From IMG/VR virus record IMGVR_UViG_3300040801_002079, positions 124,001-188,000 of that record: a DNA stretch of 64,000 nucleotides; one strand, written 5' to 3'. The position numbers were made by a program, and so were the translations under genes. Below the pieces are notes generated by a model. It saw nothing but the letters and a program-made list of their open reading frames with translations, made no database searches and was not told the origin of the DNA. Within the stretch, counting starts at the first letter, position 1. Each line of letters starts with the position of its first letter. Of this stretch, positions 7,433-54,893 are shown one piece after another.

Positions 7433-10400
7433 TTACCCTGAAACTGTCGGTGTTACGGTTATTGTCGGTGTAACCGTAGCTGTAACAGTTGGTGTAACCG
7501 TTAATGTCGGTGTAACCGTAGCTGTAACAGTTGGTGTAACTGTATTTGTTGGCGTAATCGTTGGTGTAACCGTAGTAGTCGGAGTTACTGTTGGGGTTAA
7601 TGAAATAGTAGCTGTAACAGTTGGTGTAACGGTTGGTGTAGGAGTAGGAGTAGCTTCGATGCCCTTCCATTTTAAAACCAGAGAGTCAATAACTTGCTCA
7701 ACTGTGAAATCATTTAATCCACCCTGAATAAAAATAACTTCACCTATATCAGCATTGAGTCCATCAACCATTGTCATATCATTACAAAATATCCATGATT
7801 CATCCACAACAAATGAATCAACATCCAGTGTTCCAGTGTCAACAATTTCACTGTTATAATATGCCTTAACAGACGTACCATCCTTGAATATTCCACGAAT
7901 AACAATTTCACCCGCTTCGGGATTATTTCCTACACCTTGTGTTAATGTTAATTCCGTTCCTCCATCTGGATAGAACGTAGCTATCGGTCCATCATCAACA
8001 GTGGAATTATAGAGTCTAATTCTTGCTGAACTTGTGTCGGTACTAGAAAAGAATGTGTCGGTGGAACTGTTAGCTATATTGGCAGTTACCCAGAACATCC
8101 CAACATTTGAAAAATCACTTATAGCGTTCCCCTGTGTTCCAACATTTACCGCGCCCGTCACACGGGCAACACTGAGGCCGTTAAATGCATTTTCTCTATA
8201 TGTTATATTGGCTGCATTCCTCCATGAGGGCATTGTGCCGGAATTATTAACCCATGCAGAAACTGATTGACCATCAGTTGGGTTAGTTATAATTTCCCCC
8301 TCCGATGATCCCGTTGATAACCACTGTCCATCACTTGCGTCAAGCCATGTTATAACGGAAACATCCGTATCATCAATCCACCAATTTGGTTTATCATATA
8401 AGTCATGATATGTGAAGCCATTGCCGCTATTGTAGAAGAATGAAATGTCTCCATCAGCTAATAAAACATCACCGTGCACGGCTTGTCCTATATTGCCTTG
8501 GAATTTATATCCAGTATTGGAGCCATAAAGTCCCATATTGGTGTACATCCATTGATTGTCACCAGTATTAGACGTTGGATTAGATGGGGTGTTGGTTACA
8601 GTATGCCACTCAAACGGAGACCCGTTTACAGAAATTCCCATTCTGCCAAGAGTTGAATCCCATTGGACGCAAATTAAATATCGCTGAAGTCTCTGATATT
8701 CTTCACTGAATAGTAAAATTTCATCGTCAATTAAATCTGAATTATTTCTACAAACAAACGCTATTTCGTTTCGGTGTGTACCAAAACTATCAGATATTGA
8801 TATGCCGGAATCATAAGGGTTATAGGGATTATTAACTTCACTCACGTACCTAATCCCTCGTCCTCTGAGCATCAAGAACCACCCATCTCCTTGCCCATCT
8901 TCGCCTGCTGGTCCCTTTTCTGAGCCAACACTTATAAGCGTTTTATCAGAAACATCTTCCATTGGCTCACACCATATCCAGTGGAACCAATCATTATCAA
9001 AATTAAATGATTCTGCTCTTGTTGAACCACTATTCCATCCAGATGTTGAATTATTTGAAAGCACATTATATTCCCTTCCAGTTATCATATCTTCATCTCT
9101 AACGGTGGAAATATCCCATGGAGTTGACATATCAAATTCATAAAAAGCGTCATAGGCATGTGTCATAAAGAGCTTTGTACCATCTGAGCTAATATCAATT
9201 CCATATATCTGCGATGAATCACCTTGCAGGTAATTAAAGTTATGACTGTTAGTTAATGTTGCGCTGGTTATATCCCAAGCCGTACTCAGTGTATATTGTT
9301 CAAGCTCTGCAAAATCTGCTGTTCTATTGCGGCACATTACATACATTTCAGTGCCATCGGGCTTAAATTTTAATCCTACTGGAGAGTCGGAGGTTGACGT
9401 TGTTGCAAGTGGAGTTCCACCAGATACACTTGATGTTATATCCCATGGTGTTCCTAATGTGTATTCAGAGATAGCATCTGTGCCAATAGATGTGCCGAAG
9501 AACTTTGTTCCATCGGGGCTAATATAAATACCATGCATCTCACTATTAACTACAAGCTCCCCCGCAATGGGTGCAGCATTTATATCCCAAGGTGTTGAGC
9601 ATGTTAACTGATAAATCTTAAATGTGCTGGGATTTCTCTCTTCTACCGATACATAGAGACTGGTGCCATCGGGACTGAATATAGCAGCATTTGTAGCGGC
9701 CCAGCGTGATATATCTTCAACATCAGGATGATAAAGATTGCGTCTATTCCCATCACATGTTGCTGTTGTTACATCCCATGGCGTTGACAGTGTAAATGTG
9801 AACAAATCGCTGCCGAATTCGGTAAGGATATATAATTTGGTTCCGTCTGAAGATATATCCATATCCTGTGGAACCCCATCCCAGAAATTAATTTCAAATC
9901 TACCTTCTAGTGTTGCTGTGCTCAAATCTTTAGGTGTTGACATTAGATATTGTGTAATCCAATTACCCTCTTCACCTAAAATATACAATCTGGTATTATC
10001 ATCGCTTATATGAAGCGCTCTTGCTCCGCTGTGTAGGCTTTCATCTACTGATAGTTCAATACTATCATAAGTCATGGTACTAATGTCCCATGGAGTTGAA
10101 AGGCTAAATGAATGCAATGCAAAGTAATCTGCTGGCACTAAATATCGATCAGCTATAGCAAAATATTTAGTTCCATCGGATGAAAAAGCTCCCCCATACT
10201 CTGCCCAATCAACGCCCAACGTCGATAAATCAAGGTAGTAATAACTTGTAGGGTCTAATGTTGTTATATCCCAAGCAGTGGATAGAGTATATGATGCTAC
10301 GCCACCATTGCCGTGCTCATACATAATCAAACCATCTGAGGAAAATTCAATACCATCTTCTTCACCTACATAATAATTAGTATCACTTGTTTTATAATCG

Positions 10401-12055
10401 GTGTACGCTGAATTTATATCCCATGGTGTTCTTAACTCTATCTGATAAACATTGTCTTCCCATGATCCATAAAAATAAAAATATCTACCATCTATGCTAA
10501 AAGTTGATGCTAGGGTGCCACCATCTATCCAAGAAAAGAATTTAGCATTTGATACATGTGCCCCCTCTATTGACCATGGTTTGTTAATTGTTTGCTCACA
10601 TATTCCACTATTCCCGAAATCTGTCACGAATAACCGTGTCCCATCATCTACAAAGTGTATACCAGTAGGATTTTGCCACGGTTCCGTTACGTGCATTCTT
10701 TCCACAATATTGGTGAGGTTCATCGGATCAAACCCTTCGTCTCTTATATTCGTGGTTCTATCTCCGGTTGTTTCATCCCAATATGCCGTTTTTATAAATG
10801 CCCCGGAACTCTCGTCTGCTGTGTTTTCGTTTGTTATAACAGGCTTTTCTCTGGAAGCATCTTGATTAAACTCGAACCATGTGATAACACTTGGGTATAT
10901 TGGAGGAGCGGGTGACGGCGTAGGGGTTGGTGCCAGATAAACATATTCGATGATCAGTTTTTCAGATATTCCAACCTTAACATGTGAATGTTTGGGCGTA
11001 CTACACTCACCATCACCGTCAAATCCAGCCGTATTAACATATCCATATAATTTAACGAATCCAGTGCTTGCAGATGTTGGGACCAAATCAGCTAGATGTA
11101 TAATGGTTTCATTCGCATTTTTATCATATTCAGATCGAATAATCTTATACTGCTTATCACTATCTGTCCCAGTATCTTCAATTTCAATATAACGATTAGG
11201 AAGCATACCGGTTCTTAATTGAATACTTCCGTGATTAGAACCTTCTGTTGTATTCGTAAACGAAGTTTGGGTCGTACTATGTAAATTTATTGTTGTAAAG
11301 TTGCCATCGAAGTTATAACTTTCGATTAAATATGCTCCGTTATTCTTGTTACCAATTTTATATTCGACAATGGCGTTATCCAATCCAACCGCTATTGGTT
11401 TACTCTCAGATATAACAATTGTTGTAATATTTGATATGGAATCGTATGTTGCAGATAGTACAGTGTACATATCGTCATCAACATCCGCATTATATAGTTT
11501 AAACCTGCCCTCATTGATCAACTCTTGTGTATAATTTCCCTTAACAAGAATTTGTGTCTCTGTGGTAGTGTGTACATCAAGGGTTCTTACGGGAACAACC
11601 AAAAATAATTTCTGAAAAGCTAGCTGTGGACGAATATCGCCCCTAACCACAATTGAATCATATGTTGGTATGGAATCAATTTGTGCGCGAACATCATATG
11701 TGTTATTACCTGAAATGCGAACGGTGTCAGTTACGTTTTCTATTTCATTGATGGGCAATACGTTTACAAGATCGGAGTTATCAAAAATTACACCATAACC
11801 ACCAAGACACTCAAACAAATCACAGCAGTCAACCGAGTCGAATCCACATTCGCCATCCCATGTATATCCATAACCCACTGTTTGACACAAGGGATTATTT
11901 TTATAGTCGATGTTAAAAAATATATTTTCCTCGAACTTTACATCCAAATCTTCTCGAAAATTATAGTTCTCAATAATTTCTAGAATTTTCGTATGGTACG
12001 GTTTAACGTCAAGAAAATATTTTTTAAACGAGTCGGTTGGTCTTGAGTTAGTCAT
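7433..12055 (-). CDS. Large virion fibre/adhesin: N-terminal virion module, STPWDI beta-propeller repeats, LamG-like domains, C-terminal TPTV tail
   Basis: 1540 aa; about 10 xSTPWDIxxA repeats; two VITW-starting LamG-like segments; late promoter at 12061-12067 on -. Confidence 0.8.
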   Translation of the reverse strand: MTNSRPTDSFKKYFLDVKPYHTKILEIIENYNFREDLDVKFEENIFFNIDYKNNPLCQTVGYGYTWDGECGFDSVDCCDLFECLGGYGVIFDNSDLVNVLPINEIENVTDTVRISGNNTYDVRAQIDSIPTYDSIVVRGDIRPQLAFQKLFLVVPVRTLDVHTTTETQILVKGNYTQELINEGRFKLYNADVDDDMYTVLSATYDSISNITTIVISESKPIAVGLDNAIVEYKIGNKNNGAYLIESYNFDGNFTTINLHSTTQTSFTNTTEGSNHGSIQLRTGMLPNRYIEIEDTGTDSDKQYKIIRSEYDKNANETIIHLADLVPTSASTGFVKLYGYVNTAGFDGDGECSTPKHSHVKVGISEKLIIEYVYLAPTPTPSPAPPIYPSVITWFEFNQDASREKPVITNENTADESSGAFIKTAYWDETTGDRTTNIRDEGFDPMNLTNIVERMHVTEPWQNPTGIHFVDDGTRLFVTDFGNSGICEQTINKPWSIEGAHVSNAKFFSWIDGGTLASTFSIDGRYFYFYGSWEDNVYQIELRTPWDINSAYTDYKTSDTNYYVGEEDGIEFSSDGLIMYEHGNGGVASYTLSTAWDITTLDPTSYYYLDLSTLGVDWAEYGGAFSSDGTKYFAIADRYLVPADYFALHSFSLSTPWDISTMTYDSIELSVDESLHSGARALHISDDNTRLYILGEEGNWITQYLMSTPKDLSTATLEGRFEINFWDGVPQDMDISSDGTKLYILTEFGSDLFTFTLSTPWDVTTATCDGNRRNLYHPDVEDISRWAATNAAIFSPDGTSLYVSVEERNPSTFKIYQLTCSTPWDINAAPIAGELVVNSEMHGIYISPDGTKFFGTSIGTDAISEYTLGTPWDITSSVSGGTPLATTSTSDSPVGLKFKPDGTEMYVMCRNRTADFAELEQYTLSTAWDITSATLTNSHNFNYLQGDSSQIYGIDISSDGTKLFMTHAYDAFYEFDMSTPWDISTVRDEDMITGREYNVLSNNSTSGWNSGSTRAESFNFDNDWFHWIWCEPMEDVSDKTLISVGSEKGPAGEDGQGDGWFLMLRGRGIRYVSEVNNPYNPYDSGISISDSFGTHRNEIAFVCRNNSDLIDDEILLFSEEYQRLQRYLICVQWDSTLGRMGISVNGSPFEWHTVTNTPSNPTSNTGDNQWMYTNMGLYGSNTGYKFQGNIGQAVHGDVLLADGDISFFYNSGNGFTYHDLYDKPNWWIDDTDVSVITWLDASDGQWLSTGSSEGEIITNPTDGQSVSAWVNNSGTMPSWRNAANITYRENAFNGLSVARVTGAVNVGTQGNAISDFSNVGMFWVTANIANSSTDTFFSSTDTSSARIRLYNSTVDDGPIATFYPDGGTELTLTQGVGNNPEAGEIVIRGIFKDGTSVKAYYNSEIVDTGTLDVDSFVVDESWIFCNDMTMVDGLNADIGEVIFIQGGLNDFTVEQVIDSLVLKWKGIEATPTPTPTVTPTVTATISLTPTVTPTTTVTPTITPTNTVTPTVTATVTPTLTVTPTVTATVTPTITVTPTVSG

Positions 12056-16931: not shown

Positions 16932-16999
16932 CTCAGTTTGGTTAGAGCAAGAGCTTCTAAAACTCATGGTCGTGGGTTCGAATCCCGCCCGGAGCGCCA
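16922..16999 (+). tRNA. tRNA with CUA anticodon in canonical register (putative amber suppressor), encoded CCA
   Basis: 7-bp acceptor GCTCCGG/CCGGAGC, D arm GCTC/GAGC, loop TT-CTA-AA (16955-16961), T arm GTGGG-TTCGAAT-CCCGC, G73, CCA; anticodon stem has two mismatches. Confidence 0.8.
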
Positions 17000-17011
17000 A
17001 GAATTAAAGTT

Positions 17012-20573: not shown

Positions 20574-21170
20574 TTATGGTCCTGATAGTTGTTGTCCATC
20601 ATGTCCATCAATCGTGTTACCATCCTGTCCTTCTAGATATGTTCCATCGGCTACCGAAGGTGTAACCGTTGGGGTAACGGTGCTTGTAGGTGTAACCGTT
20701 GGGGTAACGGTGCTTGTAGGTGTAACCGTTGGGGTAACGGTGCTTGTAGGTGTAGCCGTTTGTGTCGGAGTAACGGTACTTGTTGGGGTAACAGTCGGGG
20801 TAACAGTTGAAGTGGGTGTTAGTGTTGGAGTTACAGTTGGAGTTACAGTTGGAGTCGGTAATATGTTAAAGAAATCTGCCTCTCTGAATATTAAATTTAA
20901 TGTCCCAGAAGTGGGTTCCGAAAACTCAATTAATATGGTATTATTATCAACAATTTGAACAGATTGTGGTATAATTTCAGAATTACGGTTATCCAGAATC
21001 TGGAAATAAAGTTTGGTGGTTCTTCTCCAGTGCTTTACATACCATGTATCAGAAGCTTTACGCACACGAACCCTCAAGCTTTTAAGGTTTGAGTCGGATA
21101 TTTCATTGGTTGTATACCAGTTACCGTTTTCTAAGTCAATATAAAGTGGCTTGTATCTTGTTTTAAGCAT
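20574..21170 (-). CDS. Virion structural protein with TPTV repeat tail
   Basis: late promoter 21196-21202 on -; C-terminal TPTSTVTPTV repeats. Confidence 0.7.
   Translation of the reverse strand: MLKTRYKPLYIDLENGNWYTTNEISDSNLKSLRVRVRKASDTWYVKHWRRTTKLYFQILDNRNSEIIPQSVQIVDNNTILIEFSEPTSGTLNLIFREADFFNILPTPTVTPTVTPTLTPTSTVTPTVTPTSTVTPTQTATPTSTVTPTVTPTSTVTPTVTPTSTVTPTVTPSVADGTYLEGQDGNTIDGHDGQQLSGP
20659..20748. repeat. Perfect 30-nt tandem repeat x3 (encodes TPTSTVTPTV-type units)
   Basis: GGTGTAACCGTTGGGGTAACGGTGCTTGTA three times plus a partial fourth. Confidence 0.95.
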
Positions 21171-44550: not shown

Positions 44551-45933
44551 ATGGAAATTACTAGCAATATTAAAAACAAAATAGAAGAAATTTATAAAGA
44601 TTCTAATTATAATGTTAGAACCGTTAGCTTAGGACGCAAAAAGGTTGGAGATGAAAAAACGGATGAAATTGCCATTGTCATTCGAGTAGAAAAGAAAAAA
44701 CCTTTAAGTGAATTGAGCGCAGACGAAATTGTTCCAAAAACAATAACTATAGATGGACAAGATTTTAAGACTGATGTTATCGAAGACCCTAGTGAAATTA
44801 CAGCAATAGCCTGCTTTACTTCAACTGATCCTGACGTTTTAAAGTTGCAGGGTGACCCAGCGCTTCTTACTCCTCTTAAGGGTGGACAAGAACTTACACA
44901 ATTCCCAACAGGGTGGACAGACTTTGGTGGCGGAAGCTATGGATTCACTGTGGGAACATTGGGATTCATCGGAGTAGATGACATTGATGGAAAAATTGTC
45001 GGTGTGACCAATAATCATGTAGTAATTGGGAACGGAGATATAAATGGAGACAGGGATATACCGACAGAGGTTGCATCCCCATATAATATTATTGAACCTA
45101 TAGAATGGGTGGTTGATAGCTCATCGTATGCTCCCGGAGCATTACTACGTGATGAAAGTGCCCCCGGAACATTTGTAGATGGCGCACCAAATATCAAGAG
45201 ATATATTCCATTTGATGTAGATGGAACAAACTATGTGGATGTTGCGCTTCTGATTATGGACCCAACGAAGGTTGACAACACATCATATCAAATACACCAA
45301 CCAACAGGGGAGACAGCATATACGGATTATTTGCCATTTGCAAGCACCGCAGAGATCGATAGTTTACTAGCTACTCCCAGAACAATATACAGTACAGGAA
45401 GAACTACGGGACCAAAGGGGTGGGGAGTAAGTGCTTCATGTACATTAGAAATAACAGCATTAGCTGAAACCATTAGTGTTAGTGGGTTATCCGATACAAA
45501 CTTAACCTTTTCAGATGTTGTGCGATTTGAGTTTACTGATGGCAGTAATTATCCAATCGATAGTGGAGATTCTGGATCAGCCGTTGTTGCAGATTTTGAT
45601 GGAACTAGAAAAATAGTAGGGTTAGCATTTGCAGGAAGCCTAACAGCAGGATTCTTCTGTAGAATTGATCGAATAGCTGATGCTATAAAAATACGCCAGT
45701 GGGATGAGCACTATGTTTACGATGATACTGTTCCAGCAGGGGCCACACTTAAAGCTGCACCCATTGAGGATTCATCAGCGGATAGTGTAACTGTTACTCC
45801 TGAATGTAAATATCTATTCCAAGCTGGAACATCAATGACAGATACATATGATGATCTATTAGCTATAACTCCACTAGCGTGTTCAGTTACGCCAACTGTT
45901 ACACCCGAAGTAACACCAACCCCATCTGGTTAG
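44551..45933 (+). CDS. Trypsin-like (S1) serine protease with N-terminal prodomain and TPTV tail
   Basis: GTLG, TNNHV (His), VDVALL (Asp), GDSGS (Ser), VGLAFAG. Confidence 0.85.
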   Translation: MEITSNIKNKIEEIYKDSNYNVRTVSLGRKKVGDEKTDEIAIVIRVEKKKPLSELSADEIVPKTITIDGQDFKTDVIEDPSEITAIACFTSTDPDVLKLQGDPALLTPLKGGQELTQFPTGWTDFGGGSYGFTVGTLGFIGVDDIDGKIVGVTNNHVVIGNGDINGDRDIPTEVASPYNIIEPIEWVVDSSSYAPGALLRDESAPGTFVDGAPNIKRYIPFDVDGTNYVDVALLIMDPTKVDNTSYQIHQPTGETAYTDYLPFASTAEIDSLLATPRTIYSTGRTTGPKGWGVSASCTLEITALAETISVSGLSDTNLTFSDVVRFEFTDGSNYPIDSGDSGSAVVADFDGTRKIVGLAFAGSLTAGFFCRIDRIADAIKIRQWDEHYVYDDTVPAGATLKAAPIEDSSADSVTVTPECKYLFQAGTSMTDTYDDLLAITPLACSVTPTVTPEVTPTPSG

Positions 45934-46780: not shown

Positions 46781-47339
46781 TCTGTTGCCCAATCAAGTGT
46801 AACTGTAGAACAATAAGTAATGAGTAAGGTATCGTATGAGACTTACGCATATCACTATTTATCCGCTTAGTGTATAATTCTGGGCGAATAGCTTCCGGGT
46901 TCTCTAAATATTTTTCCAGCAGGCCAATCTTTCCGGGCCTAATTAATGCTAGAATGTCTGATAATTGCTGAACACTTCGGGGCTTCACTTTCTCCACAAT
47001 GTCAAAATGTTTACCAATATGGAATAACCCGCTAACAATTTTTTCACTTTCAAGTAGTGTCCAATCCGGCTCTTGCTTCAAAAGTGCCCGCATTTGAGCC
47101 TTACTCTTAAACTCTTTCAAGAGATTAAGATGTAGTAAATCAATCTTCAAGAAACCAACATCCTCAGCCTCTTTATAGGGTATGGCAGATAATTTAGTTT
47201 CGGGGTCTACAGGAATTTGCTGAAAATAAACACCAGCAGGGTGTTTTCTCAGTTTACCATCTTCGTTCATTGAGGCATAAACTAAATCAAAAACATCACT
47301 GGGATTAAAATCCGGGCGTAGATCGATATCAATGTCCAT
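46764..47339 (-). CDS. DNA polymerase III alpha (DnaE)-like fragment, C-terminal palm half
   Basis: begins MDIDIDL (catalytic DxD), KHPAGVYF, GFLKIDLL, ALIRPG, KSHTIPY. Confidence 0.85.
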   Translation of the reverse strand: MDIDIDLRPDFNPSDVFDLVYASMNEDGKLRKHPAGVYFQQIPVDPETKLSAIPYKEAEDVGFLKIDLLHLNLLKEFKSKAQMRALLKQEPDWTLLESEKIVSGLFHIGKHFDIVEKVKPRSVQQLSDILALIRPGKIGLLEKYLENPEAIRPELYTKRINSDMRKSHTIPYSLLIVLQLHLIGQQNENTT

Positions 47340-48069
47340 AATTCATTTCTATTTCTCGTTTTGTAACTATTAAATCTTCAACGCTTTCACAAAAGTTTAT
47401 CTTACTTTCATAATGTAGCATATTATACTCTTCCTGTAAAGCGAAGTTGTATTGCTGATCCTTCATGTCAAGTAAGTAAATAATAGTGTCATTGATGTTA
47501 AAGTTTTTTAACCTCATAGTCAATTCGAAAAATGGAAATTTAGAAATATCTATATCTGTTATAGGATTAAGAGATGATATCAATCCTCTCAATTGATTCA
47601 TATTCATGTCTTCGATATAAAAATCATCATCTAATCTGCTTAGCGTGATCGCTATAATGTCCAAAGCCTCTTGATATTTTTCTTCCAGATTTGGAGAAAA
47701 TCTAAAACTTATTCTTTCATTGTAATACTCGACAAGCTTTTGATGTAAGAATTGTTTTCCTGATTCAACATCCTTTAAAGACATATTAGATGAATAGTCT
47801 ATTAATATAAGACCACGTTCTTCTTCTAATTTATTAAGCTTTTCCTTATATTCTGAAATATTCTCAACAGAAAATCTATCAAGATTGCGCAAAGACTCTC
47901 TCCAATTGACCCATTGATTGCGAGATTGTGATGTAAGAGGGACATCCTGTAGTTGTGTCCAGTCACTTTCCAATAGGAGTCTGTTGCGTCTAGCAATAAG
48001 GCTGACCCATTTTATTTCTTCTTGATTTTTTGACTGCGAATATTTTAAATTCTTTATCTTTTTTATCAT
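47329..48069 (-). CDS. Phage tail assembly chaperone (Phage_tail_APC-like N-terminus)
   Basis: RNRLLLESDWTQLQDVP...WVNWRESLRNL. Confidence 0.75.
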   Translation of the reverse strand: MIKKIKNLKYSQSKNQEEIKWVSLIARRNRLLLESDWTQLQDVPLTSQSRNQWVNWRESLRNLDRFSVENISEYKEKLNKLEEERGLILIDYSSNMSLKDVESGKQFLHQKLVEYYNERISFRFSPNLEEKYQEALDIIAITLSRLDDDFYIEDMNMNQLRGLISSLNPITDIDISKFPFFELTMRLKNFNINDTIIYLLDMKDQQYNFALQEEYNMLHYESKINFCESVEDLIVTKREIEMNYGH

Positions 48070-48082: not shown

Positions 48083-50383
48083 TTATGCTGGCTTAAAGAA
48101 GAAATATACCGTGGCCCGTGTTAGGGTTGCATCGTATGTTGTCCAAACCGCAGGGAATGAAAGATTTGATGATCCGTAACTAGTCACTATACTCTGATTT
48201 ATATAGTTAGTGTTCTCAGCTTCATTATAATAAACCCTATAAAATGTTCGCAAATAATTGACCACATATCCATCAGGAACATTTATATCAAATCCAGTTA
48301 CATCTCCGTCATTGCCATCAATATCACTCGTTATAGATAAAGAGAACTTTTCACCGTCAACGAAGGTCGTGGTCCTACTTCCAAACGAACTGGTTCCTCC
48401 GGTTTGTCTAATATCTGCACTTAACGTAAATGATCTTTCTGGAGTCGGCGTTGGGGAAGGGCCATCTGGTGGTGGGGTTCCATCTATGTTCCAACAGAAT
48501 TGATTTAAATAATTACATATGTTTTTGCCTTCCATCCATCTAGTAGCAAAATCACCTGAAAATGAATCATTATGTATTATCTGAACCGCGCCATCTGGTA
48601 ACAACGCCGCACTATCGAATGTTACATCATTCATACTGAAGGTTCTAGTTCCCAAATTACAATTTCCGCTTCCATCAGAAACTCCTATATTTGTATACCC
48701 CATTGGTTGAGTTGAAGACTCACCAATCATTGCTAATAACTGATTTCCTGTAATTCCCACGGGTTCAAATATAAAGAGCCATTTTCTTCCGGGTCCACCA
48801 ATTTCTTGTAGATATAACCCAGCTTTACATATAGCATATTCCGATGTAGTTCTAGACATAGAACCAAAATTATCATTATAATTATTATATCCAACTACTC
48901 TTGTCGCGTTAGAGAAAATTTGCCCAGCCGGAACGGTGTCGCCTTCGGCTGGTGTTATAACGGAGCAACTTCCTGTAACAGGAGCATCATCTACTCCATC
49001 ATGATCCCAGCTTGAGTACCAATATGTCAATGTTCCGGGCGATGAAGGGAATGGCCCCTCAGTCCCCGGATTTGTTAAGTTTGTTCCACCCGCAGCACAT
49101 CCACCAACATATCCAACCGAACTAATATCAGATGATCCGGGTATCCACCATTGTCGGGTATTGCCAACACTATCAGTGAGAATAACTCTACCGTGGAATC
49201 TTACGGTCATGCTATAATTATTTTCAGTATTAAATTCCGCGCTATCAAATTTCAAACGAATATATGGTATTTCTCCGGGGGATATATTTGTACGCAATGA
49301 TCCAGTTCCGTCTCCACCGAAATAACTCTTTAAGACTGTGCTGAGGGGATATGCCGACCCCTGATAGTACGTGCCTCCACTTCCAACCTCAACTAAGCCA
49401 GAGGGATCACTTGTGGGAGATTGAATAGTGGCGAATACATTTTGGAAATCAACAGTGTAAGGTGGGACCCCACCACTAATGTTTTGTAATGAAAAATATG
49501 TACTCTGATCATATGCACTTTTTGCAACATTACCCTCAGTATCGATGTGTGATGTGTTCGTTCCGCCTCCGGGTCCGGGAGTTCCGGGATCACATGGTGC
49601 GGGAGATACATAGAGTCGCGTATCGACTCCTAATGGCTCTACTGGCTCGGGAGTATCGGTTGGAGTCGGTGATACCGGAGGTGAGGGGGGAGGCGTTCCT
49701 GCGGGGCTGCTAGTTGGTGTGACTGTAATTCCCACTGGAGGGGTTGGGGTTGGAGTAACCTCTGGTAAATCTGGGGGAGTAACCTGTTGCCCCAGATTGT
49801 TATTGCCGCGTATTCCTATAATTAAATAGTTTACGTAAGATTCAATAGTAGTGGTATCTCCTAACACCTTATAGTGCATGGTTACTCTTGCTTCAGAGTC
49901 AGTACCACAAGTCATTCCAGAAAATCCGGAATTATATGCTGCGGGTGCTACTGACCATATACATTCAGAGTATTCAAACTCTCGGCCCGTTACAGGGCTA
50001 ATGGGTTTAGGCAATTGCTGACCATGATATACTGTTCCCCAGTTTGCTGCAACATCATCGTAACTTGATATTGGAATCCAATATGTTCCATCCCAAAAAT
50101 ATAGCACACCAGATGTTGAGTTATACCAAAACTGTCCATGGGTTGGGTTAACAAGCAAATTCTCATGACTTTGCGATGTGTCGGGTGTTCCGGGAACAGA
50201 TGGGTTTTCAGGGCAAGCAAAATTTTCTAGCAAGTGTAATAGATTTTCATTAAGATATTCACCATATTCTAGATTTATTCTTCCAAACATAGCAACATCA
50301 ACAGAGGTTCTATTAACATCACCCTGTTTAACTTCTATTGGACTAGCACTAACTTGTGTAAAATCTATTTTATATGTTGACAT
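48083..50383 (-). CDS. Virion fibre protein, paralog 4 of tandem array
   Basis: shared FGR..LEYGE.LNENLLHLLENFACPE module, PT linker, unique C-terminus. Confidence 0.8.
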   Translation of the reverse strand: MSTYKIDFTQVSASPIEVKQGDVNRTSVDVAMFGRINLEYGEYLNENLLHLLENFACPENPSVPGTPDTSQSHENLLVNPTHGQFWYNSTSGVLYFWDGTYWIPISSYDDVAANWGTVYHGQQLPKPISPVTGREFEYSECIWSVAPAAYNSGFSGMTCGTDSEARVTMHYKVLGDTTTIESYVNYLIIGIRGNNNLGQQVTPPDLPEVTPTPTPPVGITVTPTSSPAGTPPPSPPVSPTPTDTPEPVEPLGVDTRLYVSPAPCDPGTPGPGGGTNTSHIDTEGNVAKSAYDQSTYFSLQNISGGVPPYTVDFQNVFATIQSPTSDPSGLVEVGSGGTYYQGSAYPLSTVLKSYFGGDGTGSLRTNISPGEIPYIRLKFDSAEFNTENNYSMTVRFHGRVILTDSVGNTRQWWIPGSSDISSVGYVGGCAAGGTNLTNPGTEGPFPSSPGTLTYWYSSWDHDGVDDAPVTGSCSVITPAEGDTVPAGQIFSNATRVVGYNNYNDNFGSMSRTTSEYAICKAGLYLQEIGGPGRKWLFIFEPVGITGNQLLAMIGESSTQPMGYTNIGVSDGSGNCNLGTRTFSMNDVTFDSAALLPDGAVQIIHNDSFSGDFATRWMEGKNICNYLNQFCWNIDGTPPPDGPSPTPTPERSFTLSADIRQTGGTSSFGSRTTTFVDGEKFSLSITSDIDGNDGDVTGFDINVPDGYVVNYLRTFYRVYYNEAENTNYINQSIVTSYGSSNLSFPAVWTTYDATLTRATVYFFFKPA

Positions 50384-50413
50384 CTATTATTCCCAATTAT
50401 CTGTATTTATCCA

Positions 50414-51784
50414 TTAAAGACAATCCGGACATTCATCACAATGTTCATAATGTCCATAGCTAATAGGAAGCTCCCAGTCAGTCGGCGTTCGATTATTTGA
50501 ACCCCCAACAGGTGTTGGCTCTCTTGGTATATACCAATTAACACTATTGCCTTCAGCATCTATTAGAATAACCCACCCTGACAATGTGTAGTTTATTCGA
50601 TATGTGTAAGTTGGATCGAAATTATCAGGGTTATCAAACTTAGGAGTAAACTTAACATATGGTAGAGATGTTGTATTTAGATTTGTGCGCAACCACGATG
50701 TATCCGACCCCACTCCTCCATAATATCTTATATCCATTGTCATTGGGGGCAGCGCATATTGTCGAGTCTGACTTTCCCCTGTTAAACTATACCACCCTGT
50801 TATCGGGCTAACGACTATCCATCTAAAGATTACTTGATACGGTCCATTGCCTCCTGATAAATCCTGTAAGGACACATAATATGGTTGCTCAACTTGATTT
50901 ATTTGTATTGATGGGCCACATGTGTTGTATAGTCTTATTCCGGTTCCTCCGGGTCCGGGCGCTCCGGGGTCTCCGGGAGATGGTGCAGTATATAATCTGG
51001 TATTAATGCCCAGAGGTTGAGGAGACGGAGTTGGTGTAACTTCGGCTGTAACTGTTGGGGTTACTGTGCTTGTTGGAGTTACAGTTGGTGTAAAATCAGG
51101 GGTGCTCGTCACGGTAGGAGTAACTGTTGGGGTTAATCCATATGTTGGGGTTGGGGTTGGAGTTATACCAGATGGAAGCGGTGGTGGAACTAAGCTTCCT
51201 TTGTTTTGATTCCCCTTTATTCCTATGATTAAGTAATTCGCTGTTCCGGGAAGTAGATCGGGTGGGGTGCCGTATTCCATTGTAACAATGGCATTGTTGT
51301 CTGTTGCGCAATTTACAACACTAAACCCCGTATCATATGTCGCAGGAGCCACACACCATATACATTCGTTATATTCAAACTCTTGACCACTTGTTGGGCT
51401 TACAGGTTTAGGTATCTGCTCTCCATGAAATATTGATCCCCAATTGGCAGCTACATCATCCATACTGCTAATTGGGGTCCACGCAGATTCTGTATAAACA
51501 TATAATGTGCCTTTTGTTGTGTTATACCAGAATTGTCCATTTATTGAATTATCAAATATATTATCAAATGATAAATTGGTGTCTGGGTTTCCGGGATTTA
51601 AAGGGTCTTCGGGGCAGGCAAAGTTTTCCAATAGATGAACAAGGTTTTCCTGAAGAGCGTCACCGTATTTTAATCGAATATATCCAAATAATGATATATC
51701 CGTAGATGTAGTATCAACAGATTGCTCATTAACCTTTATTGGAGCTAGGTTGATGTTTGTATATTGAACGGTATAAGTGGTCAT
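50414..51784 (-). CDS. Virion fibre protein, paralog 3
   Basis: same N-module; PT linker; Cys-rich end HCDECPDCL. Confidence 0.8.
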   Translation of the reverse strand: MTTYTVQYTNINLAPIKVNEQSVDTTSTDISLFGYIRLKYGDALQENLVHLLENFACPEDPLNPGNPDTNLSFDNIFDNSINGQFWYNTTKGTLYVYTESAWTPISSMDDVAANWGSIFHGEQIPKPVSPTSGQEFEYNECIWCVAPATYDTGFSVVNCATDNNAIVTMEYGTPPDLLPGTANYLIIGIKGNQNKGSLVPPPLPSGITPTPTPTYGLTPTVTPTVTSTPDFTPTVTPTSTVTPTVTAEVTPTPSPQPLGINTRLYTAPSPGDPGAPGPGGTGIRLYNTCGPSIQINQVEQPYYVSLQDLSGGNGPYQVIFRWIVVSPITGWYSLTGESQTRQYALPPMTMDIRYYGGVGSDTSWLRTNLNTTSLPYVKFTPKFDNPDNFDPTYTYRINYTLSGWVILIDAEGNSVNWYIPREPTPVGGSNNRTPTDWELPISYGHYEHCDECPDCL

Positions 51785-51802
51785 TCGATCCTCACCTTAT
51801 AC

Positions 51803-53353
51803 CTAGTCGTAACCAAGTATTCTTAACTCTGTCAGACATGAACCCGGACATATACTGCAATCATAATAGTGATTCCAAGTGCTATTAAATTTATATGTCG
51901 ATCCGGGGTTAACTCGTTGATTCGATCCTCCGGTTTGAGTTGCATCCTCGGTTAACCACCATGTAATAGATGTACCAACCGAATCTGTCGCTCTAATATA
52001 TCCCCATACTTCAGTCCAGAATCCAAGATAGCTTGCTTTATCTAAATCGTACCAAAGATCATCATTACCTGTATAGGTGTCAACCCTAGTATAACATGCC
52101 TCTCCGGGATCAACATTAATTCTAATTTCATTAACCCCGCTTGATTGTCGCGTTCCGCCACCATAATAAACTCTCAGTTCAGGCTCGACTGGAAGTGGAT
52201 ATGGATTAGGATCGGTAGGCCACATCATGTATCCAGTAGTATTATCAGTTCCAGCAGAATAGATATTACTCATATCAACAGTGTAAGGTGGAACGCCGCC
52301 AGATAACCCAACTAGATATACACTAACTGTTCTCTCAAGAGCATAAGAAAAATATAAATGTCTAAACGCTGCAACCGTTGCTGGGTCCTGATCGGGCCAC
52401 ACAAGATCGCCACACGAGTTTTTATGGTAAGTTGGTGAGCCACTACTAACGTCATTTGTGTATCCCGGTGAAGGGTACACATATAATCTAGCATCTCTGC
52501 CAAACGGCTCAACACTATTGGGTGGGGTTGATGCGGGTGTGCTCGTTGGCGTTGGCGCAAGAGGTGACGGTGATGGTGTAACAGAATTTGTGGGGGTAAC
52601 TGTTGGGGTTGCGCCAAATGTTGGTGTAGGGGTAGCAGTCGGTGCTGGTGTTTGGGTCGGGGTTATAACTGGGGGATTAATGTTATTAATTCCTCTGTTA
52701 ACATTTCCACGTATGCCAATAATCATGTAATTGGCAATACCGTTTATCAGCGTTGAGTCTCCCGTAACCCTGTATTGCATTGTGACCCGCGCATCATCAT
52801 CATCCGTTGAGCATACCATGAAGTCAATTTCATCATCATAATGATATGGACCCACCATCCAAGAACATTCTTCATATGTAAAGGTTGCACCCGTGCTTGA
52901 CACTGGAAGGGGAATCTGTTCCCCGTGTGCAATGGTTCCATAGTTTGCGGCTATTTCAGAAAATAAACTGAGGGGTACCCAAGTGCCAACATCATTAATC
53001 ATTTTATAAACAAAAAGATGCCCTTCGGTTGATGATGTAAGACCACTGCTTGCAGGAAATCCGGAATTGTACCAAAGCTGTCCTTCAATTGCATTTTCTA
53101 ATGTGTGTCGAATAGCTCCCTCTGTTTCAAGGGTTTCAGATTCAGAGCTAATAAAGGGGTTACCCGCATTCTGAGGGTCTTCGGGACAAGCAAAGTTTTC
53201 CAATAAATGAAGAAGGTTTTCATTCATTAATTCTCCATATTCCAATCTCTCCCTGCCAAATAAAGCAATAGCCAAGTCTTGGTTTATGGTTTTTTCATCC
53301 ACATTAGTGGATGGTTTACTTTTATCTGTTCTGTTAATTACATAAGTAACCAT
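51803..53353 (-). CDS. Virion fibre protein, paralog 2
   Basis: same N-module; PT linker; end DCSICPGSC. Confidence 0.8.
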   Translation of the reverse strand: MVTYVINRTDKSKPSTNVDEKTINQDLAIALFGRERLEYGELMNENLLHLLENFACPEDPQNAGNPFISSESETLETEGAIRHTLENAIEGQLWYNSGFPASSGLTSSTEGHLFVYKMINDVGTWVPLSLFSEIAANYGTIAHGEQIPLPVSSTGATFTYEECSWMVGPYHYDDEIDFMVCSTDDDDARVTMQYRVTGDSTLINGIANYMIIGIRGNVNRGINNINPPVITPTQTPAPTATPTPTFGATPTVTPTNSVTPSPSPLAPTPTSTPASTPPNSVEPFGRDARLYVYPSPGYTNDVSSGSPTYHKNSCGDLVWPDQDPATVAAFRHLYFSYALERTVSVYLVGLSGGVPPYTVDMSNIYSAGTDNTTGYMMWPTDPNPYPLPVEPELRVYYGGGTRQSSGVNEIRINVDPGEACYTRVDTYTGNDDLWYDLDKASYLGFWTEVWGYIRATDSVGTSITWWLTEDATQTGGSNQRVNPGSTYKFNSTWNHYYDCSICPGSCLTELRILGYD

Positions 53354-53526
53354 TATACTTCCTCATAACTGTCAATCTTTGAATGTATCATGTCGGATTT
53401 AAATTCGCCGTCTGATATCTCAAAGACTTCAATTCCCGAATCTGCTGAATTTTGCGCCGATACCCGCTTTTGTGCAGTTCCTATAATAACTTGTTCTCCA
53501 TCGATTTCTTTAACCAATAAAAACAT
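53353..53526 (-). CDS. 57-aa small protein missed by the ORF track ([16 protein letters not shown]...)
   Basis: ATG at 53526 overlaps the upstream stop; its TAA overlaps the downstream ATG (TAATG). Confidence 0.65.
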   Translation of the reverse strand: MFLLVKEIDGEQVIIGTAQKRVSAQNSADSGIEVFEISDGEFKSDMIHSKIDSYEEV

Positions 53527-54893
53527 TATAGTATTTCCCCGCTCCCCTCGACTGTTAATGCAAGCCTAATATCATCAGAGTCGCCTTTTGGTCCAGTTAT
53601 TGTTACAACTATAACCTGAGTCCATTCACTTCCTGATGTTGGTGGACCTAAACACCACGATTTAGTTGTGCCCAGATTACCCGATGTTGGCCCGGATGCT
53701 ACAGGATATGGAAATTCTTGGGTGGCGGTAAATGTATAATCTGATCCATCTTCTCCATCTCTAAATCCATTAACTACCCACTCACCATAAACTCCACATG
53801 ATGCTGCAACGACAGTTCCGTTGGAGTTTATGCTTATACATGCGGTTGAAGCCGTCTTAAGACAAGCATAAAAGCCGCCCTTAACATCGCCAGTTGGATC
53901 AACTGATAGAGATGGTGTAACCTCTGGTGTAACAGTTGGATCAGGCGTATTTGATGGTGTAACTGGAGGCGTTGGCAATGGAGTCTCCGTGGGGTCAGGC
54001 GTACTTGACTGCGTTGGTCCGGGAGTTCCTGCGGGCGTATTTGATGGAGTAACTGGGGGCGTTGGCTCTGGAGTATTTGTTGGTGTAGCAGTAACTCCGG
54101 GTGCGGGTGTATTTGATGGCGTAACAGTATTGGTCGGTGTAACTGTTGGTGTATTTGTTGGGGTTGGCTGTGGAGAGCTTCCGGGAGTCACCGTTGGGGT
54201 TGCGGTAACAACCGGTGTTCCAGTTTGAGTTGGCGTTGGTGTAGGAGTTGCCGCCTCTGGTAAACTTGGAACAGGGCCGATTGCTCCCAGATTTGCATTA
54301 TCCCTTATGCCAACAATCTGATAATTAACTAACCCAGTAGTTAAATCGGAACCAACGGGACGATACTGCATATTAACTGTTGCCTGATCATCAGTAGAAC
54401 AAACCATGTAGTTAATATCATCAGGGTAATTAAACGGGGAAACTATCCACGAACATTCTTCATATTGAAATACATATCCTGTTGTGGGACATACGGGCTG
54501 TGGCAATTGCTCACCGTGTGCAATCACTCCATAGTTGCCAGCAACATCACACCCTGTACCAAGTGCCGTCCATTCTGTTCCATTATATCGATAAGGTCTT
54601 TTATCCGTTGTGTTATACCAAATCTGTCCCTCAATAGGGTTTTCAAGAAGTGCGCCAAATGCATTGGCTAAATCTGGATTTCCGGGATTACCAGCATCTT
54701 CGGGACAGGCAAAGTGTTCTAATAAATGTAAAACATTTTCATTAAATATTTCACCATAATCTCGTTTTGTTTTACCAACGAACGCGATGTCGGCTTTATT
54801 TGTAATCAATTCACCCTTGGAAACAAAGATTGCATCTTTGCTGGCATCGGTAAAGTTTATTGTATAAAGATTTTGTGAGCAGTTAGTTGCCAT
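53526..54893 (-). CDS. Virion fibre protein, paralog 1
   Basis: same N-module; long PT linker; tandem late promoters 54923-54936. Confidence 0.8.

What the first reader, a model, noticed from the sequence alone, without database searches (positions are those of the whole stretch)
7433..54893. Genome-wide reuse of a mucin-like Thr-Pro-Thr-Val linker in about ten virion proteins
Seen: TPTVTPT tracts in ORFs 7433, 19056, 20574, 25963, 42958 (about 190 aa), 44551, 48083, 50414, 51803 and 53526, encoded by related ACACCAAC/GTTAC codon runs and including perfect tandem copies (20659-20748). Established: such tracts form extended, often O-glycosylated stalks in cellulases and S-layer proteins. Inference: a 'hairy', possibly glycosylated virion whose shared repeat DNA also acts as a recombination joint for swapping tip domains.
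Basis: partly seen in the sequence, partly recalled or inferred. Interest (0 to 1): 0.6.

Follow-up and report, generated by a model that had tools for sequence, protein, structure and literature searches.

The report
Thr-Pro stalks in jumbo-phage tail proteins
A 317-kb XacN1-like jumbo phage from a microbial mat joins or ends about 18 of its proteins, several of them tail or baseplate parts, with the same floppy threonine-proline stretch, which in related phages marks the point where binding domains are swapped and which may carry sugars.

Summary
All ten named ORFs carry TPTVTPT-type tracts. Genome-wide, 18 of 456 ORFs do, against about 2 in shuffles. The 30-nt tandem repeat at 20658-20760 is confirmed.

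The genome is a 316.8-kb jumbo phage with terminal repeats, related to Xanthomonas phages XacN1 and Xoo-sp13. Those phages have the same tracts at many loci, so this is a clade trait.

The carriers are modular: a conserved N-terminal domain, a Thr-Pro tract, then a variable C-terminal domain or nothing. Six proteins end in a Thr-Pro tail closed by "SG".

Virion status is supported for some carriers only:
- The four-gene array at 48083-54893 is followed by a tail assembly chaperone gene.
- A 3404-aa carrier outside the window is the ortholog of a protein found in RsoM2USA virions.

The recombination-joint idea is supported in relatives. Two independent contig pairs show the C-domain replaced, with the left breakpoint inside the linker.

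Glycosylation is plausible but unproven. A GT8-like glycosyltransferase gene sits next to Thr-Pro proteins in 5 of 5 genomes examined, and XacN1 virions contain Schiff-stained glycoproteins of unknown identity.

Verdict: a new variant of known kinds, of moderate interest.

The parts
7436..7666 (-). C-terminal Thr-Pro tail (aa 1464-1540) of the 1540-aa ORF 7433-12055; it ends ...TVTPTVSG-stop
10886..10933 (-). Short Thr-Pro linker (aa 375-390, LAPTPTPSPAPPIYPS) just after the N-terminal domain (aa 5-369) that ORF 7433 shares with XacN1, Xoo-sp13, CM1 and RAS14
20037..20144 (-). Thr-Pro linker (aa 135-170) of ORF 19056-20546, between an N-terminal domain and a PKD plus DUF285 (BspA-type repeat) module
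20655..20870 (-). Thr-Pro tract (aa 101-172) of ORF 20574-21170, with the near-perfect 30-nt x 3.4 tandem repeat at 20658-20760; a 26-aa acidic peptide follows
26233..26358 (-). Thr-Pro-Ser tract (aa 32-73) of the small ORF 25963-26451, between a hydrophobic N-terminus and a Gly run plus basic C-terminal part
43912..44514 (+). About 200-aa Thr-Pro region (aa 319-519) of ORF 42958-44547, after the 320-aa 'family A' N-domain; only 10 residues follow it
45883..45930 (+). Short C-terminal Thr-Pro tail (aa 445-460, ...TPTPSG-stop) of ORF 44551-45933, a protease-like protein (phrog_20754; DSGDSGS motif)
48083..54893 (-). Tandem array of four paralogs (48083, 50414, 51803, 53526): N-domain of about 200 aa (phrog_15511), Thr-Pro linker, beta-sandwich C-domain. 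Syntenic with XacN1 ORF232-237 next to the clamp loader. Linkers lie at 49631-49783 (plus 48425-48478), 51014-51184, 52514-52681 and 53910-54269
47329..48069 (-). Phage tail assembly chaperone (PF16778, 35.8 bits against a cut-off of 26.6), immediately downstream of the array

Best explanation
The Thr-Pro tracts are conserved, unstructured, extended spacers and tails. They belong to a modular set of host-recognition and structural proteins in an XacN1-like jumbo myophage.

The typical carrier has three parts: a conserved N-terminal domain (inferred to dock on the tail or baseplate), a Thr-Pro stalk, and a variable beta-sandwich or repeat domain (inferred to bind ligand). Stalk length ranges from 26 to 219 aa among homologs of the array. 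Some carriers stop after the stalk with a conserved ...TPTxSG end.

The tracts change length by slippage of 30- and 42-nt units.

In this clade the stalk is also where homology between otherwise near-identical genes stops. C-terminal domain cassettes are exchanged with one crossover in the linker and the other at the stop codon or the next gene. This probably works because the protein repeat alone gives about 70-76% DNA identity over 100-250 nt, not because the DNA is specially conserved.

The tracts are probably also substrates of phage-encoded cytoplasmic glycosyltransferases. That step is inferred, not shown.
For: Shown directly:
- Tracts occur in 18 ORFs against about 2 by chance.
- Every paralog of a carrier is another carrier, and 16 of 40 internal paralog-alignment boundaries lie within 15 aa of a tract, against 6.0 expected (maximum 15 in 2000 trials).
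- In all 120 listed homologs of ORF 50414, the N-domain is followed at once by a T/P-rich stretch.
- XacN1 and Xoo-sp13 each have 51 TPTxTPT pattern hits at many loci; RsoM2USA has none.
- The AlphaFold2 model has confident N- and C-domains and a low-confidence linker.

Cassette swaps in relatives:
- L015 against L017: 94% DNA identity up to aa 256-261, inside the linker; then 503 against 653 unrelated nt; then 99.4% identity from the stop codon on.
- L021 against L022: 86% identity up to about aa 263 (linker spans aa 205-294); an unrelated C-domain; then 91.6% identity for 5 kb.
- 82 homolog pairs have N-domains at least 60% identical but unrelated C-domains.

Tail or virion role:
- Phage_tail_APC gene downstream of the array.
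- The N-domain resembles the R2 pyocin fibre foot, AP22 gp53 and LKA1 gp49 (Z 4.7-5.3) and BFVD tail-collar and gp10-like proteins.
- The 3404-aa carrier is the ortholog of XacN1 ORF325 and of the virion-detected RsoM2USA_361, and lies between baseplate wedge and sheath genes.
- The ORF at genome 9179-10648 shares its N-domain with XacN1 ORF370 and ORF372 in the tail module.

Glycosylation:
- Two GT2 genes, an acyltransferase gene and a weak Capsule_synth-like gene lie beside the capsid gene.
- The ORF at genome 13115-14206 folds as a retaining GT-A enzyme like glycogenin and the Skp1 galactosyltransferase (pLDDT 96, probability 1.0).
- That gene lies near Thr-Pro proteins in 5 of 5 genomes.
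- XacN1 virions show at least two glycoprotein bands.
Against: - No virion proteomics or imaging exists for this phage.
- The XacN1 authors saw no tail fibres and did not name the glycoprotein bands.
- Structural matches for the array's domains are weak: Z below 6.5, generic beta-sandwiches.
- Several window carriers lie among replication and NAD-salvage genes, not in a structural module.
- DNA similarity between linkers in this genome does not exceed the codon-resampled null. The longest exact match is 24 nt against a null mean maximum of 23; the best blastn score is 120 bits against a null of 121. There is therefore no sign of recent exchange or gene conversion among this genome's own linkers.
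- The swaps were seen in relatives whose array proteins are about 41-45% identical to ORF 50414 over the aligned N-terminal part, not in this lineage.
- In the nearest relative, divergence in the ORF 48083 ortholog starts about 120 aa before the second linker.
- Gene linkage with glycosyltransferases is circumstantial.
Confidence: 0.65

Rival explanations
1. The tracts are plain, unmodified Pro-Thr spacers, as in many bacterial multidomain enzymes. The phage glycosyltransferases act on something else, such as DNA, host polysaccharide or other virion proteins.
For: - The disordered linker sits between folded domains.
- Phage GT2 enzymes and PmgQ-like proteins have other known or proposed roles. 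P1 PmgQ is annotated 'putative morphogenetic function' in one record and 'glycosyltransferase' in another.
- No prolyl hydroxylase, GT1 or clear Maf-type enzyme was found.
- The identity of the XacN1 glycoproteins is unknown.
Against: - The GT8-like gene lies within a few genes of Thr-Pro proteins in 5 of 5 genomes at 35-58% identity.
- Long tails with nothing attached, conserved with a TPTQSG end in relatives, are hard to explain as mere spacers.
- XacN1 virions do carry glycoproteins.
Confidence: 0.35
2. Most carriers are not virion parts. They act inside or on the infected cell, for example as adhesins, enzymes or envelope-acting factors, and Thr-Pro linkers are simply this clade's preferred spacer.
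For: - ORFs 19056, 20574, 25963, 42958 and 44551 sit among non-structural genes.
- ORF 44551 looks like a serine protease.
- ORF 25963 has a hydrophobic N-terminus.
- Family A has no homolog in cultured phages.
Against: - A tail chaperone gene follows the array.
- The giant carrier is the ortholog of a virion-detected protein.
- XacN1 carriers ORF369, 370 and 372 lie in one gene string with the sheath stabiliser and sheath genes.
- Several N-domains give weak matches to PHROG 'virion structural protein' families.
- None of the printed N-termini looks like a signal peptide; this is by eye only, with no predictor run.
Confidence: 0.15
3. The tracts form an ordered fibre, for example bundled polyproline-II helices in an oligomer, rather than a floppy stalk.
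For: - The periodicity is strict at 10- and 14-residue units.
- Tail fibres are normally trimeric.
- AlphaFold2 on a monomer cannot see an oligomeric repeat fold.
Against: - Model confidence is low in the tract.
- Length varies from 26 to 219 aa among homologs, and there are many indels between close relatives.
- No fibres were seen on XacN1 by negative stain.
Confidence: 0.08
4. The tracts are functionless slippage-generated low-complexity DNA.
For: A near-perfect tandem repeat shows recent slippage.
Against: - The tract sits at the same position in all 120 listed homologs and in cultured relatives with about 50% G+C.
- It always stays in frame.
- A conserved terminal motif closes the tails.
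Confidence: 0.02

Closest known systems
Pro-Thr ('PT box') linkers of bacterial cellulases and xylanases (Cellulomonas fimi CenA/Cex) and Thr/Pro-rich cellulosome scaffoldin linkers (from my own knowledge, not checked in a paper here)
   Same: Alternating Thr-Pro low-complexity sequence that is extended and joins a catalytic or anchor domain to a binding domain. Those linkers are O-glycosylated in the native host. Here, disorder and position between domains were tested.
   Different: - These proteins have no evident signal peptide, so any glycosylation would have to happen in the cytoplasm.
- Many tracts here are terminal tails, not linkers.
- The tract is reused in 18 proteins of one virus.
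Adhesin cassette swapping in phage tail fibres at conserved motifs: collagen-like repeats flanking the host-range region of Streptococcus thermophilus phages, and His-box or glycine-rich motifs in T-even gp37/gp38 (from my own knowledge)
   Same: Low-complexity or short conserved sequence bounds a variable receptor-binding region and coincides with recombination breakpoints. A conserved N-terminal anchor pairs with a variable C-terminus, and a chaperone gene lies downstream.
   Different: - The joint here is a Thr-Pro stalk, not a Gly-X-Y or His-box motif.
- The proteins form a tandem array of four to six paralogs.
- No trimeric shaft is recognisable.
Virion glycosylation by phage-encoded glycosyltransferases in mycobacteriophages Che8 and Rita (Freeman et al. 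2023, as cited in PMC11256854), and the Schiff-stained glycoproteins of XacN1 (PMC5852040)
   Same: The phage encodes several glycosyltransferases near structural genes, and a close cultured relative has glycoproteins in the virion.
   Different: - As cited, the glycans in Che8 and Rita are attached to the major capsid protein.
- The capsid protein here has no Thr-Pro tract, and the proposed acceptors are tail-associated stalks.
- No acceptor has been identified in the XacN1 clade.
XacN1 ORF232-237 and phrog_15511 (annotated hypothetical / unknown function)
   Same: They are direct homologs of the window's four-gene array, with the same synteny next to the clamp loader and the same N-domain plus Thr-Pro linker architecture.
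   Different: There are four copies here against six in XacN1, with different C-domains. The XacN1 paper does not use the words proline, threonine or linker, and states that no tail fibre homologs were found.

Membership tests
Pro-Thr interdomain linker (PT box type) | Low-complexity alternating Thr/Pro sequence | tested here: met
   46 tracts, about 1500 aa in all, in 18 ORFs
Pro-Thr interdomain linker (PT box type) | Lies between two independently folded domains | tested here: inconclusive
   Met for ORFs 19056, 25963, 48083, 50414, 51803 and 53526, the short linker of ORF 7433, and two carriers outside the window. Not met for 11 carriers whose last tract is C-terminal or is followed by 31 aa or fewer
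Pro-Thr interdomain linker (PT box type) | Unstructured, extended conformation | tested here: met
   AlphaFold2 pLDDT is 44-59 over aa 200-250 of ORF 50414, with no secondary structure. This is a prediction only
Mucin-like O-glycosylated domain | Dense O-glycans on Ser/Thr of the repeats | not testable with these tools
   Only indirect support: glycosyltransferase genes, their linkage to Thr-Pro proteins, and XacN1 Schiff-stained bands
Phage tail fibre / receptor-binding protein array | Conserved N-terminal attachment domain with variable C-terminal domain | tested here: met
   N-domains are 43-55% identical among the four paralogs. In most homologs only about 43% of the query (the N-domain) aligns, and 82 pairs have similar N-domains but unrelated C-domains
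Phage tail fibre / receptor-binding protein array | Tail fibre assembly chaperone gene adjacent | tested here: met
   PF16778 Phage_tail_APC at 47329-48069, above the curated cut-off; also present in relative L019
Phage tail fibre / receptor-binding protein array | Recognisable fibre or spike fold (trimeric shaft, beta-helix, collar) | tested here: inconclusive
   No Pfam fibre domain. Only weak structural matches of aa 106-189 to R2 pyocin, AP22 and LKA1 fibre tips (Z 4.7-5.3) and to BFVD tail-collar and gp10-like models, plus protein-atlas leads scoring below 0.9
Phage tail fibre / receptor-binding protein array | Presence in the virion | not testable with these tools
   No proteome for this phage. 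Published XacN1 and RsoM2USA gel-band proteomics do not list the array proteins
Retaining GT-A glycosyltransferase (GT8/GT6-like), for the ORF at genome 13115-14206 | GT-A Rossmann-like fold with a DxD motif | tested here: met
   Model pLDDT 96; Foldseek matches to glycogenin, the Skp1 alpha-galactosyltransferase and ABO transferases at probability 1.0, target TM-score 0.55-0.64. D228, L229 and D230 are invariant in 62 homologs. The Pfam GT8 model itself gives no hit
Retaining GT-A glycosyltransferase (GT8/GT6-like), for the ORF at genome 13115-14206 | Transfers sugar to the Thr-Pro tracts | not testable with these tools
   Rests on gene neighbourhood only
XacN1-like jumbo myophage clade | Shared gene content and synteny with XacN1 | tested here: met
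   Tail sheath 62% identical, baseplate wedge 59%, giant protein 40% over 3100 aa, with the same order around the clamp loader and the array. No nucleotide-level match in the phage collection for the one 4.8-kb stretch tried (29181-33957)

The most novel reading that the evidence does not exclude
XacN1-like jumbo phages run their own cytoplasmic O-glycosylation system: a GT8-like enzyme, GT2 enzymes, an acyltransferase and possible Maf-like enzymes, plus a GT9 enzyme in XacN1 and relative L024 (not searched for in this genome). It would coat the Thr-Pro stalks and the free ...TPTQSG tails of about 18 tail and baseplate proteins with glycans. The virion would then carry a mucin-like brush of thin, glycan-bearing tentacles tipped with exchangeable binding domains instead of rigid fibres. 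That would explain why XacN1 shows no visible tail fibres yet has a wide host range and Schiff-positive virion proteins.
Probability: 0.3. Interest if true: 0.8.

Novelty: new variant of a known kind. Interest (0 to 1): 0.55.

Why it matters
**Missing fibres.** XacN1-type jumbo phages are candidate biocontrol agents with broad host range, but their host-recognition proteins are unannotated, and the XacN1 paper concluded that tail fibres are absent. This analysis offers candidates: a tandem array of tethered binding domains with a chaperone gene, plus a wider family of Thr-Pro-linked modular proteins.

**Host range.** The work shows at DNA level where binding-domain cassettes are exchanged in nature in this clade. 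That helps in reading host-range evolution from genomes.

**Virion glycosylation.** If the tracts are glycosylated, this would extend phage-encoded virion glycosylation from a few actinophages to Gram-negative jumbo phages, and would identify a compact acceptor sequence.

**If not.** If the tracts are unmodified, the finding is an ordinary though unusually pervasive use of Pro-Thr spacers.

Tried and rejected
- **Excess DNA identity between linkers.** The longest exact match between linkers of different genes is 24 nt, against a null mean maximum of 23.1. Best blastn scores equal the codon-resampled null. No excess, so the idea of specially shared repeat DNA or recent gene conversion in this genome is rejected.
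- **Stop-codon read-through.** I tested whether read-through joins "SG-stop" ORFs to the next in-frame ORF, using the phage's CUA-anticodon tRNA. Five of the six stops are TAA, and genome-wide stop use is ordinary (TAA 265, TGA 120, TAG 71). Rejected.
- **Pro hydroxylation.** No prolyl 4-hydroxylase (PF13640) was found.
- **Other glycosyltransferase models.** GT1 (PF00534) and GT8 (PF01501) profiles gave no hit. The Maf/MptE-like model (PF01973) gave only sub-threshold hits.
- **PDB searches.** Sequence searches with the glycosyltransferase-like proteins gave nothing useful.
- **Fold searches with the ORF 50414 model.** Foldseek and VIA-align against the PDB gave only generic beta-sandwich matches for the C-domain.
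- **Family A homologs.** tblastn of the family A N-domain against cultured phages found no match. Profile comparison of families A and B shares only a 39-column motif (probability 47%).
- **Literature.** A search for Thr-Pro linkers in phages returned nothing relevant. The Freeman 2023 paper is not held in the library.
- **Reads.** All runs come from one sample, probably the assembly's source. There were no variants, and contigs break at the repeat.
- **Change-point test.** All 18 of 18 breakpoints fell in the linker, but pairs were selected by N-domain and C-domain identity, so the test is partly circular and the pairs are not independent. I do not count it as strong evidence.
Full report
**1. 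What genome this is**

The window is bases 124001-188000 of a 316,801-bp virus record with direct terminal repeats. G+C is 39.4%. The genome has 43 tRNA genes and one tmRNA gene. It was recovered from a microbial-mat metagenome, found in one study only.

A 4.8-kb stretch (29181-33957) found no nucleotide-level relative among cultured phages. Protein-level relatives are clear:
- Xanthomonas phages XacN1 and Xoo-sp13
- Stenotrophomonas phages CM1 and RAS14
- more distantly, Ralstonia phage RsoM2USA and Agrobacterium phage Atu_ph07

Compared with XacN1, the tail sheath is 62% identical, the baseplate wedge 59%, and a 3404-aa giant protein 40% over about 3100 residues. This is an uncultured XacN1-like jumbo myophage.

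**2. The observation**

| Measure | Observed | Control |
|---|---|---|
| ORFs with a tract, of 456 | 18 | mean 1.9, max 6, in 200 residue shuffles |
| TPTxTPT DNA pattern hits | 76 | 0 for the reversed pattern |
| CCA share of Pro codons in tracts | 64% | 38% elsewhere |
| GTT share of Val codons in tracts | 67% | 49% elsewhere |

With a sliding-window definition there are 46 genuine tracts, about 1500 residues in all.

The tandem repeat is confirmed at 20658-20760: 30-nt unit, 3.4 copies, 98% matches. Weaker 42-nt periodicities occur in ORFs 7433 and 42958.

The eight carriers outside the window are:
- four consecutive genes at genome 5006-10648
- two at 16576-17979
- a 3404-aa protein at 269586-279800
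- a 3257-aa protein at 306946-316719

The antisense ORFs over the tracts (for example 20614-20958 on the + strand and 43905-44579 on the - strand) I take to be by-products of the codon periodicity.

**3. Anatomy: linkers and tails**

*True interdomain linkers.* In ORFs 19056, 48083, 50414, 51803 and 53526, and at aa 375-390 of ORF 7433, the tract lies between domains. In ORF 25963 it lies between a hydrophobic N-terminus and a Gly-rich, basic C-terminal part.

*Tails.* In eleven carriers the last tract is either the C-terminus itself or is followed by 31 residues or fewer.

*A conserved ending.* Six proteins end ...TPT(V/Q/P)SG-stop. Only 7 of 456 ORFs end in SG, against 1.8 expected. The same TPTQSG ending recurs in three proteins of relative contig L023, and the variant TPTPSG in homolog P0063. 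I have no explanation for this ending.

*Short acidic peptides.* Three carriers have a short acidic peptide after the tract (for example LDESGGTILDESGNPILEE). XacN1 ORF325 has the same kind of motif between its own Thr-Pro tracts.

**4. Modularity**

In an all-against-all BLASTP, every paralog of a carrier is another carrier. The shared modules are:

| Module | Carriers |
|---|---|
| Family A, N-domain of about 320 aa | ORF 42958; genome 6872; genome 306946 |
| Family B, N-domain of about 200 aa (phrog_15511) | the four tandem genes 48083-54893 |
| N-domain of about 95 aa | ORF 20574; genome 5006 |
| N-domain of about 160 aa | genome 16576 and 17203 |
| PKD plus DUF285 module | ORF 19056; genome 6872 |
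| Internally repeated region, similar to a stretch annotated 'putative isomerase ybhE' | ORF 7433; genome 306946 |

Of 40 internal alignment boundaries, 16 lie within 15 residues of a tract, against 6.0 expected (maximum 15 in 2000 random placements). Nearly all the exceptions belong to the internal repeat family.

This is what linkers between domains should give. On its own it does not show recombination.

**5. The trait belongs to the clade**

- All 120 listed homologs of ORF 50414 have a T/P-rich stretch directly after the N-domain.
- Linker length ranges from 26 to 219 residues, median 80.
- XacN1's six paralogs ORF232-237 have the same architecture and lie in the same place next to the clamp loader.
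- XacN1 and Xoo-sp13 each have 51 TPTxTPT pattern hits spread over many loci. RsoM2USA has none.
- XacN1 carriers include ORF325, ORF369, ORF370, ORF372 and the 2823-aa ORF384.
- XacN1 has 50% G+C, so the tracts are not a product of this genome's base composition.
- The XacN1 paper does not contain the words proline, threonine or linker.

**6. Are they virion proteins?**

The evidence differs by protein.

*a. The giant carrier (outside the window).* It is the ortholog of XacN1 ORF325 and RsoM2USA_361. The RsoM2USA paper assigns ORF361 to a virion gel band of more than 288 kDa (PMC8504454). In this genome the gene lies between the baseplate wedge gene and the sheath stabiliser and sheath genes. 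It also matches phrog_10938, "virion structural protein", at E 1.5e-57.

*b. The four-gene array in the window.*
- It is followed at once by a gene with a Phage_tail_APC domain (35.8 bits against a cut-off of 26.6). The nearest relative contig has the same arrangement.
- The AlphaFold2 model of ORF 50414 (mean pLDDT 83) has a beta-rich N-domain, a low-confidence linker, and a beta-sandwich C-domain with pLDDT above 90.
- The C-domain gives only generic adhesin, pilin and carbohydrate-binding matches (Z 5-6).
- Residues 106-189 of the N-domain match the tips of the R2 pyocin fibre, AP22 gp53 and LKA1 gp49 (Z 4.7-5.3), and BFVD models named tail collar and gp10 C-terminal.
- The protein atlas gives weak leads to Mtd_N and T4_gp9_10_N.
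- Each hit is weak, but they all point to the tail.

*c. The cluster at genome 5006-10648.* It corresponds to XacN1 ORF369-372, which lie in one string with the sheath stabiliser and sheath genes.

*d. ORFs 19056, 20574, 25963, 42958 and 44551.* There is no direct evidence for these. Their neighbours are NAD-salvage, primase, clamp loader and helicase genes. ORF 44551 looks like a serine protease.

**7. Is the linker a recombination joint?**

*Within this genome the DNA evidence is negative.*
- The longest exact match between tracts of different genes is 24 nt, against a null mean maximum of 23.1.
- The best local alignments (68-76% identity over 120-255 nt) score the same as codon-resampled controls.
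- So the "related codon runs" follow from the protein repeat and codon bias. There is no sign of recent gene conversion.

In pairwise alignments, identity holds through the N-domain and the first part of the linker and then collapses.

Two DNA-level cases from independent samples:

| Pair | Left of breakpoint | Breakpoint | Replaced segment | Right of segment |
|---|---|---|---|---|
| L015 vs L017 | 94% identity | codon 256-261, inside the linker | 503 vs 653 unrelated nt | 99.4% identity from the stop codon |
| L021 vs L022 | 86% identity | about codon 263 (linker spans 205-294) | unrelated C-domain | 91.6% identity for 5 kb |

In the second pair, the incoming C-domain is distantly related to that of the neighbouring paralog.

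The exchanged unit is therefore the distal linker plus the C-domain. One crossover lies in the linker and the other at the gene end.

*Caveats.*
- The array proteins of these relatives are about 41-45% identical to ORF 50414 over the aligned N-terminal part, so they are not close relatives of this phage.
- In the closest relative found, the ORF 48083 ortholog diverges about 120 residues before the second Thr-Pro tract.
- My change-point count (18 of 18 in the linker) is partly circular.

**8. Glycosylation**

*Glycosyltransferase genes in this genome.*
- One cassette lies beside the gp23-like capsid gene. It holds a weak Capsule_synth-like gene, a hexapeptide acyltransferase, a 250-aa GT2, and a 673-aa GT2 fused to a PmgQ-like domain.
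- A second cassette lies at genome 13115-15569. It is homologous to XacN1 ORF373-375.
- The ORF373 homolog has an invariant DLD motif. Its model (pLDDT 96) matches glycogenin, the Skp1 alpha-galactosyltransferase and ABO transferases at probability 1.0.
- Homologs of that enzyme occur fused to GT1, GT2, GT8, TylF methyltransferase and MptE-like domains.

*Linkage to Thr-Pro proteins.*
- The GT8-like gene lies within a few genes of Thr-Pro proteins in this genome, XacN1, and three contigs at 58%, 42% and 40% identity.
- In one of those contigs, the MptE-like, GT2, acyltransferase, GT8-like and GT9 genes form one gene string that runs into large Thr-Pro proteins.

*Experimental evidence from a relative.* The XacN1 authors detected at least two Schiff-stained glycoprotein bands in virions and suggested the phage's own enzymes make them. 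They did not identify the bands (PMC5852040).

*Weighing it.* Virion glycosylation by phage enzymes is known in mycobacteriophages Che8 and Rita (cited in PMC11256854). No prolyl hydroxylase was found here. All of this makes glycosylation of the tracts a reasonable hypothesis. I put it at about one in three. It is not a result.

**9. Mechanism proposed**

Steps directly supported:
- The carriers are modular, with Thr-Pro tracts at module borders or ends.
- The tracts are predicted to be disordered.
- Tract length varies, and there is one recent slippage event.
- The architecture is conserved across the clade.
- Cassette exchange in relatives has a breakpoint in the linker.
- A tail chaperone gene follows the array.

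Steps inferred:
- The N-domains dock on the baseplate or tail.
- The stalks let the C-domains reach out. A 57-120-residue stalk would span roughly 17-36 nm if fully extended at about 0.3 nm per residue (my estimate).
- The thin stalks escape negative stain, which would reconcile "no tail fibres" with XacN1's wide host range.
- The tracts are glycosylated.

**10. Verdict**

| Question | Verdict |
|---|---|
| The observation | confirmed, and wider than reported |
| Stalk idea | supported |
| Virion claim | supported for some carriers |
| Recombination joint | outcome supported in relatives; proposed DNA basis not supported |
| Glycosylation | open |

The closest known things are Pro-Thr linkers of secreted bacterial enzymes, motif-bounded adhesin swapping in tail fibres, and phage-encoded virion glycosylation. 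This is a new variant of those kinds and had not been described for the XacN1 group in the papers I could search.

Noticed in passing
window 16922-16999 (+): A tRNA with anticodon CTA (it would read the amber stop TAG; ARAGORN labels it Pyl). Stop-codon use in the genome is ordinary (TAA 265, TGA 120, TAG 71) and ORF density under code 11 is 91%, so there is no sign of genome-wide recoding. Its role is unknown.
   Followed up: partly
window 40015-40365 (+): A phage-encoded tmRNA gene, with tag peptide ANDSIYDQALAA.
   Followed up: no
window 31316-33957 (+): An NAD salvage pair: a cytidylyltransferase/NMN adenylyltransferase-like protein fused to Nudix (phrog_395), and nicotinamide phosphoribosyltransferase (phrog_448, E 1e-156).
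   Followed up: no
six ORF ends: window 7436 (-) and 45930 (+); genome 5865-6782 (-), 9179-10648 (-), 16576-17199 (+), 269586-279800 (+): Six Thr-Pro tails end with the same ...TPT(V/Q/P)SG-stop. In three cases the next gene starts 3-4 nt after the stop. The TPTQSG ending recurs in three proteins of relative contig L023, and TPTPSG in homolog P0063. It could be a processing, attachment or glycosylation-end signal. Unexplained.
   Followed up: partly
genome 212352-217845 (outside the window; locus L006 7353-12846): A sugar-modification cassette lies back to back with the gp23-like major capsid gene, with tRNA genes interspersed: a weak Capsule_synth-like gene, a hexapeptide acyltransferase, a GT2, and a GT2 fused to a PmgQ-like/GT8-like domain. 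The tRNAs are Thr-GGU at 212291, Val-UAC at 216579 and Pro-GGG at 217878.
   Followed up: partly
genome 207-240 kb (outside the window): The genome has 43 tRNA genes in all, 37 of them between 207 and 240 kb. They include two Pro-UGG, Thr-UGU, Thr-GGU and Val-GAC, which match the commonest codons of the Thr-Pro tracts (CCA, ACA, ACT, GTT).
   Followed up: no
window 57543-57585: A perfect 12-nt x 3.6 tandem repeat (TCTTCAGGGACT) inside ORF 57362-58393, which has a weak Rz-like spanin match.
   Followed up: no
window 20614-20958 (+), 43109-43456 (-), 43905-44579 (-): Long antisense ORFs lie over the Thr-Pro coding repeats. I take them to be artefacts of stop-free codon periodicity, not genes.
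   Followed up: yes
protein P0105 (homolog of ORF 50414) and locus L025 14978-16927: One array homolog carries a Hint / pretoxin-HINT domain at its C-terminus, just below the Pfam cut-off (27.6 against 27.7 bits). A relative contig has an intein-containing thymidylate synthase gene.
   Followed up: no
genome 11191-12087 (+) and 219906-220739 (-): GIY-YIG (SegE-like) homing endonuclease genes lie next to the glycosyltransferase/Thr-Pro cluster and near the capsid region. The first is just below the Pfam cut-off (22.7 against 25 bits).
   Followed up: no
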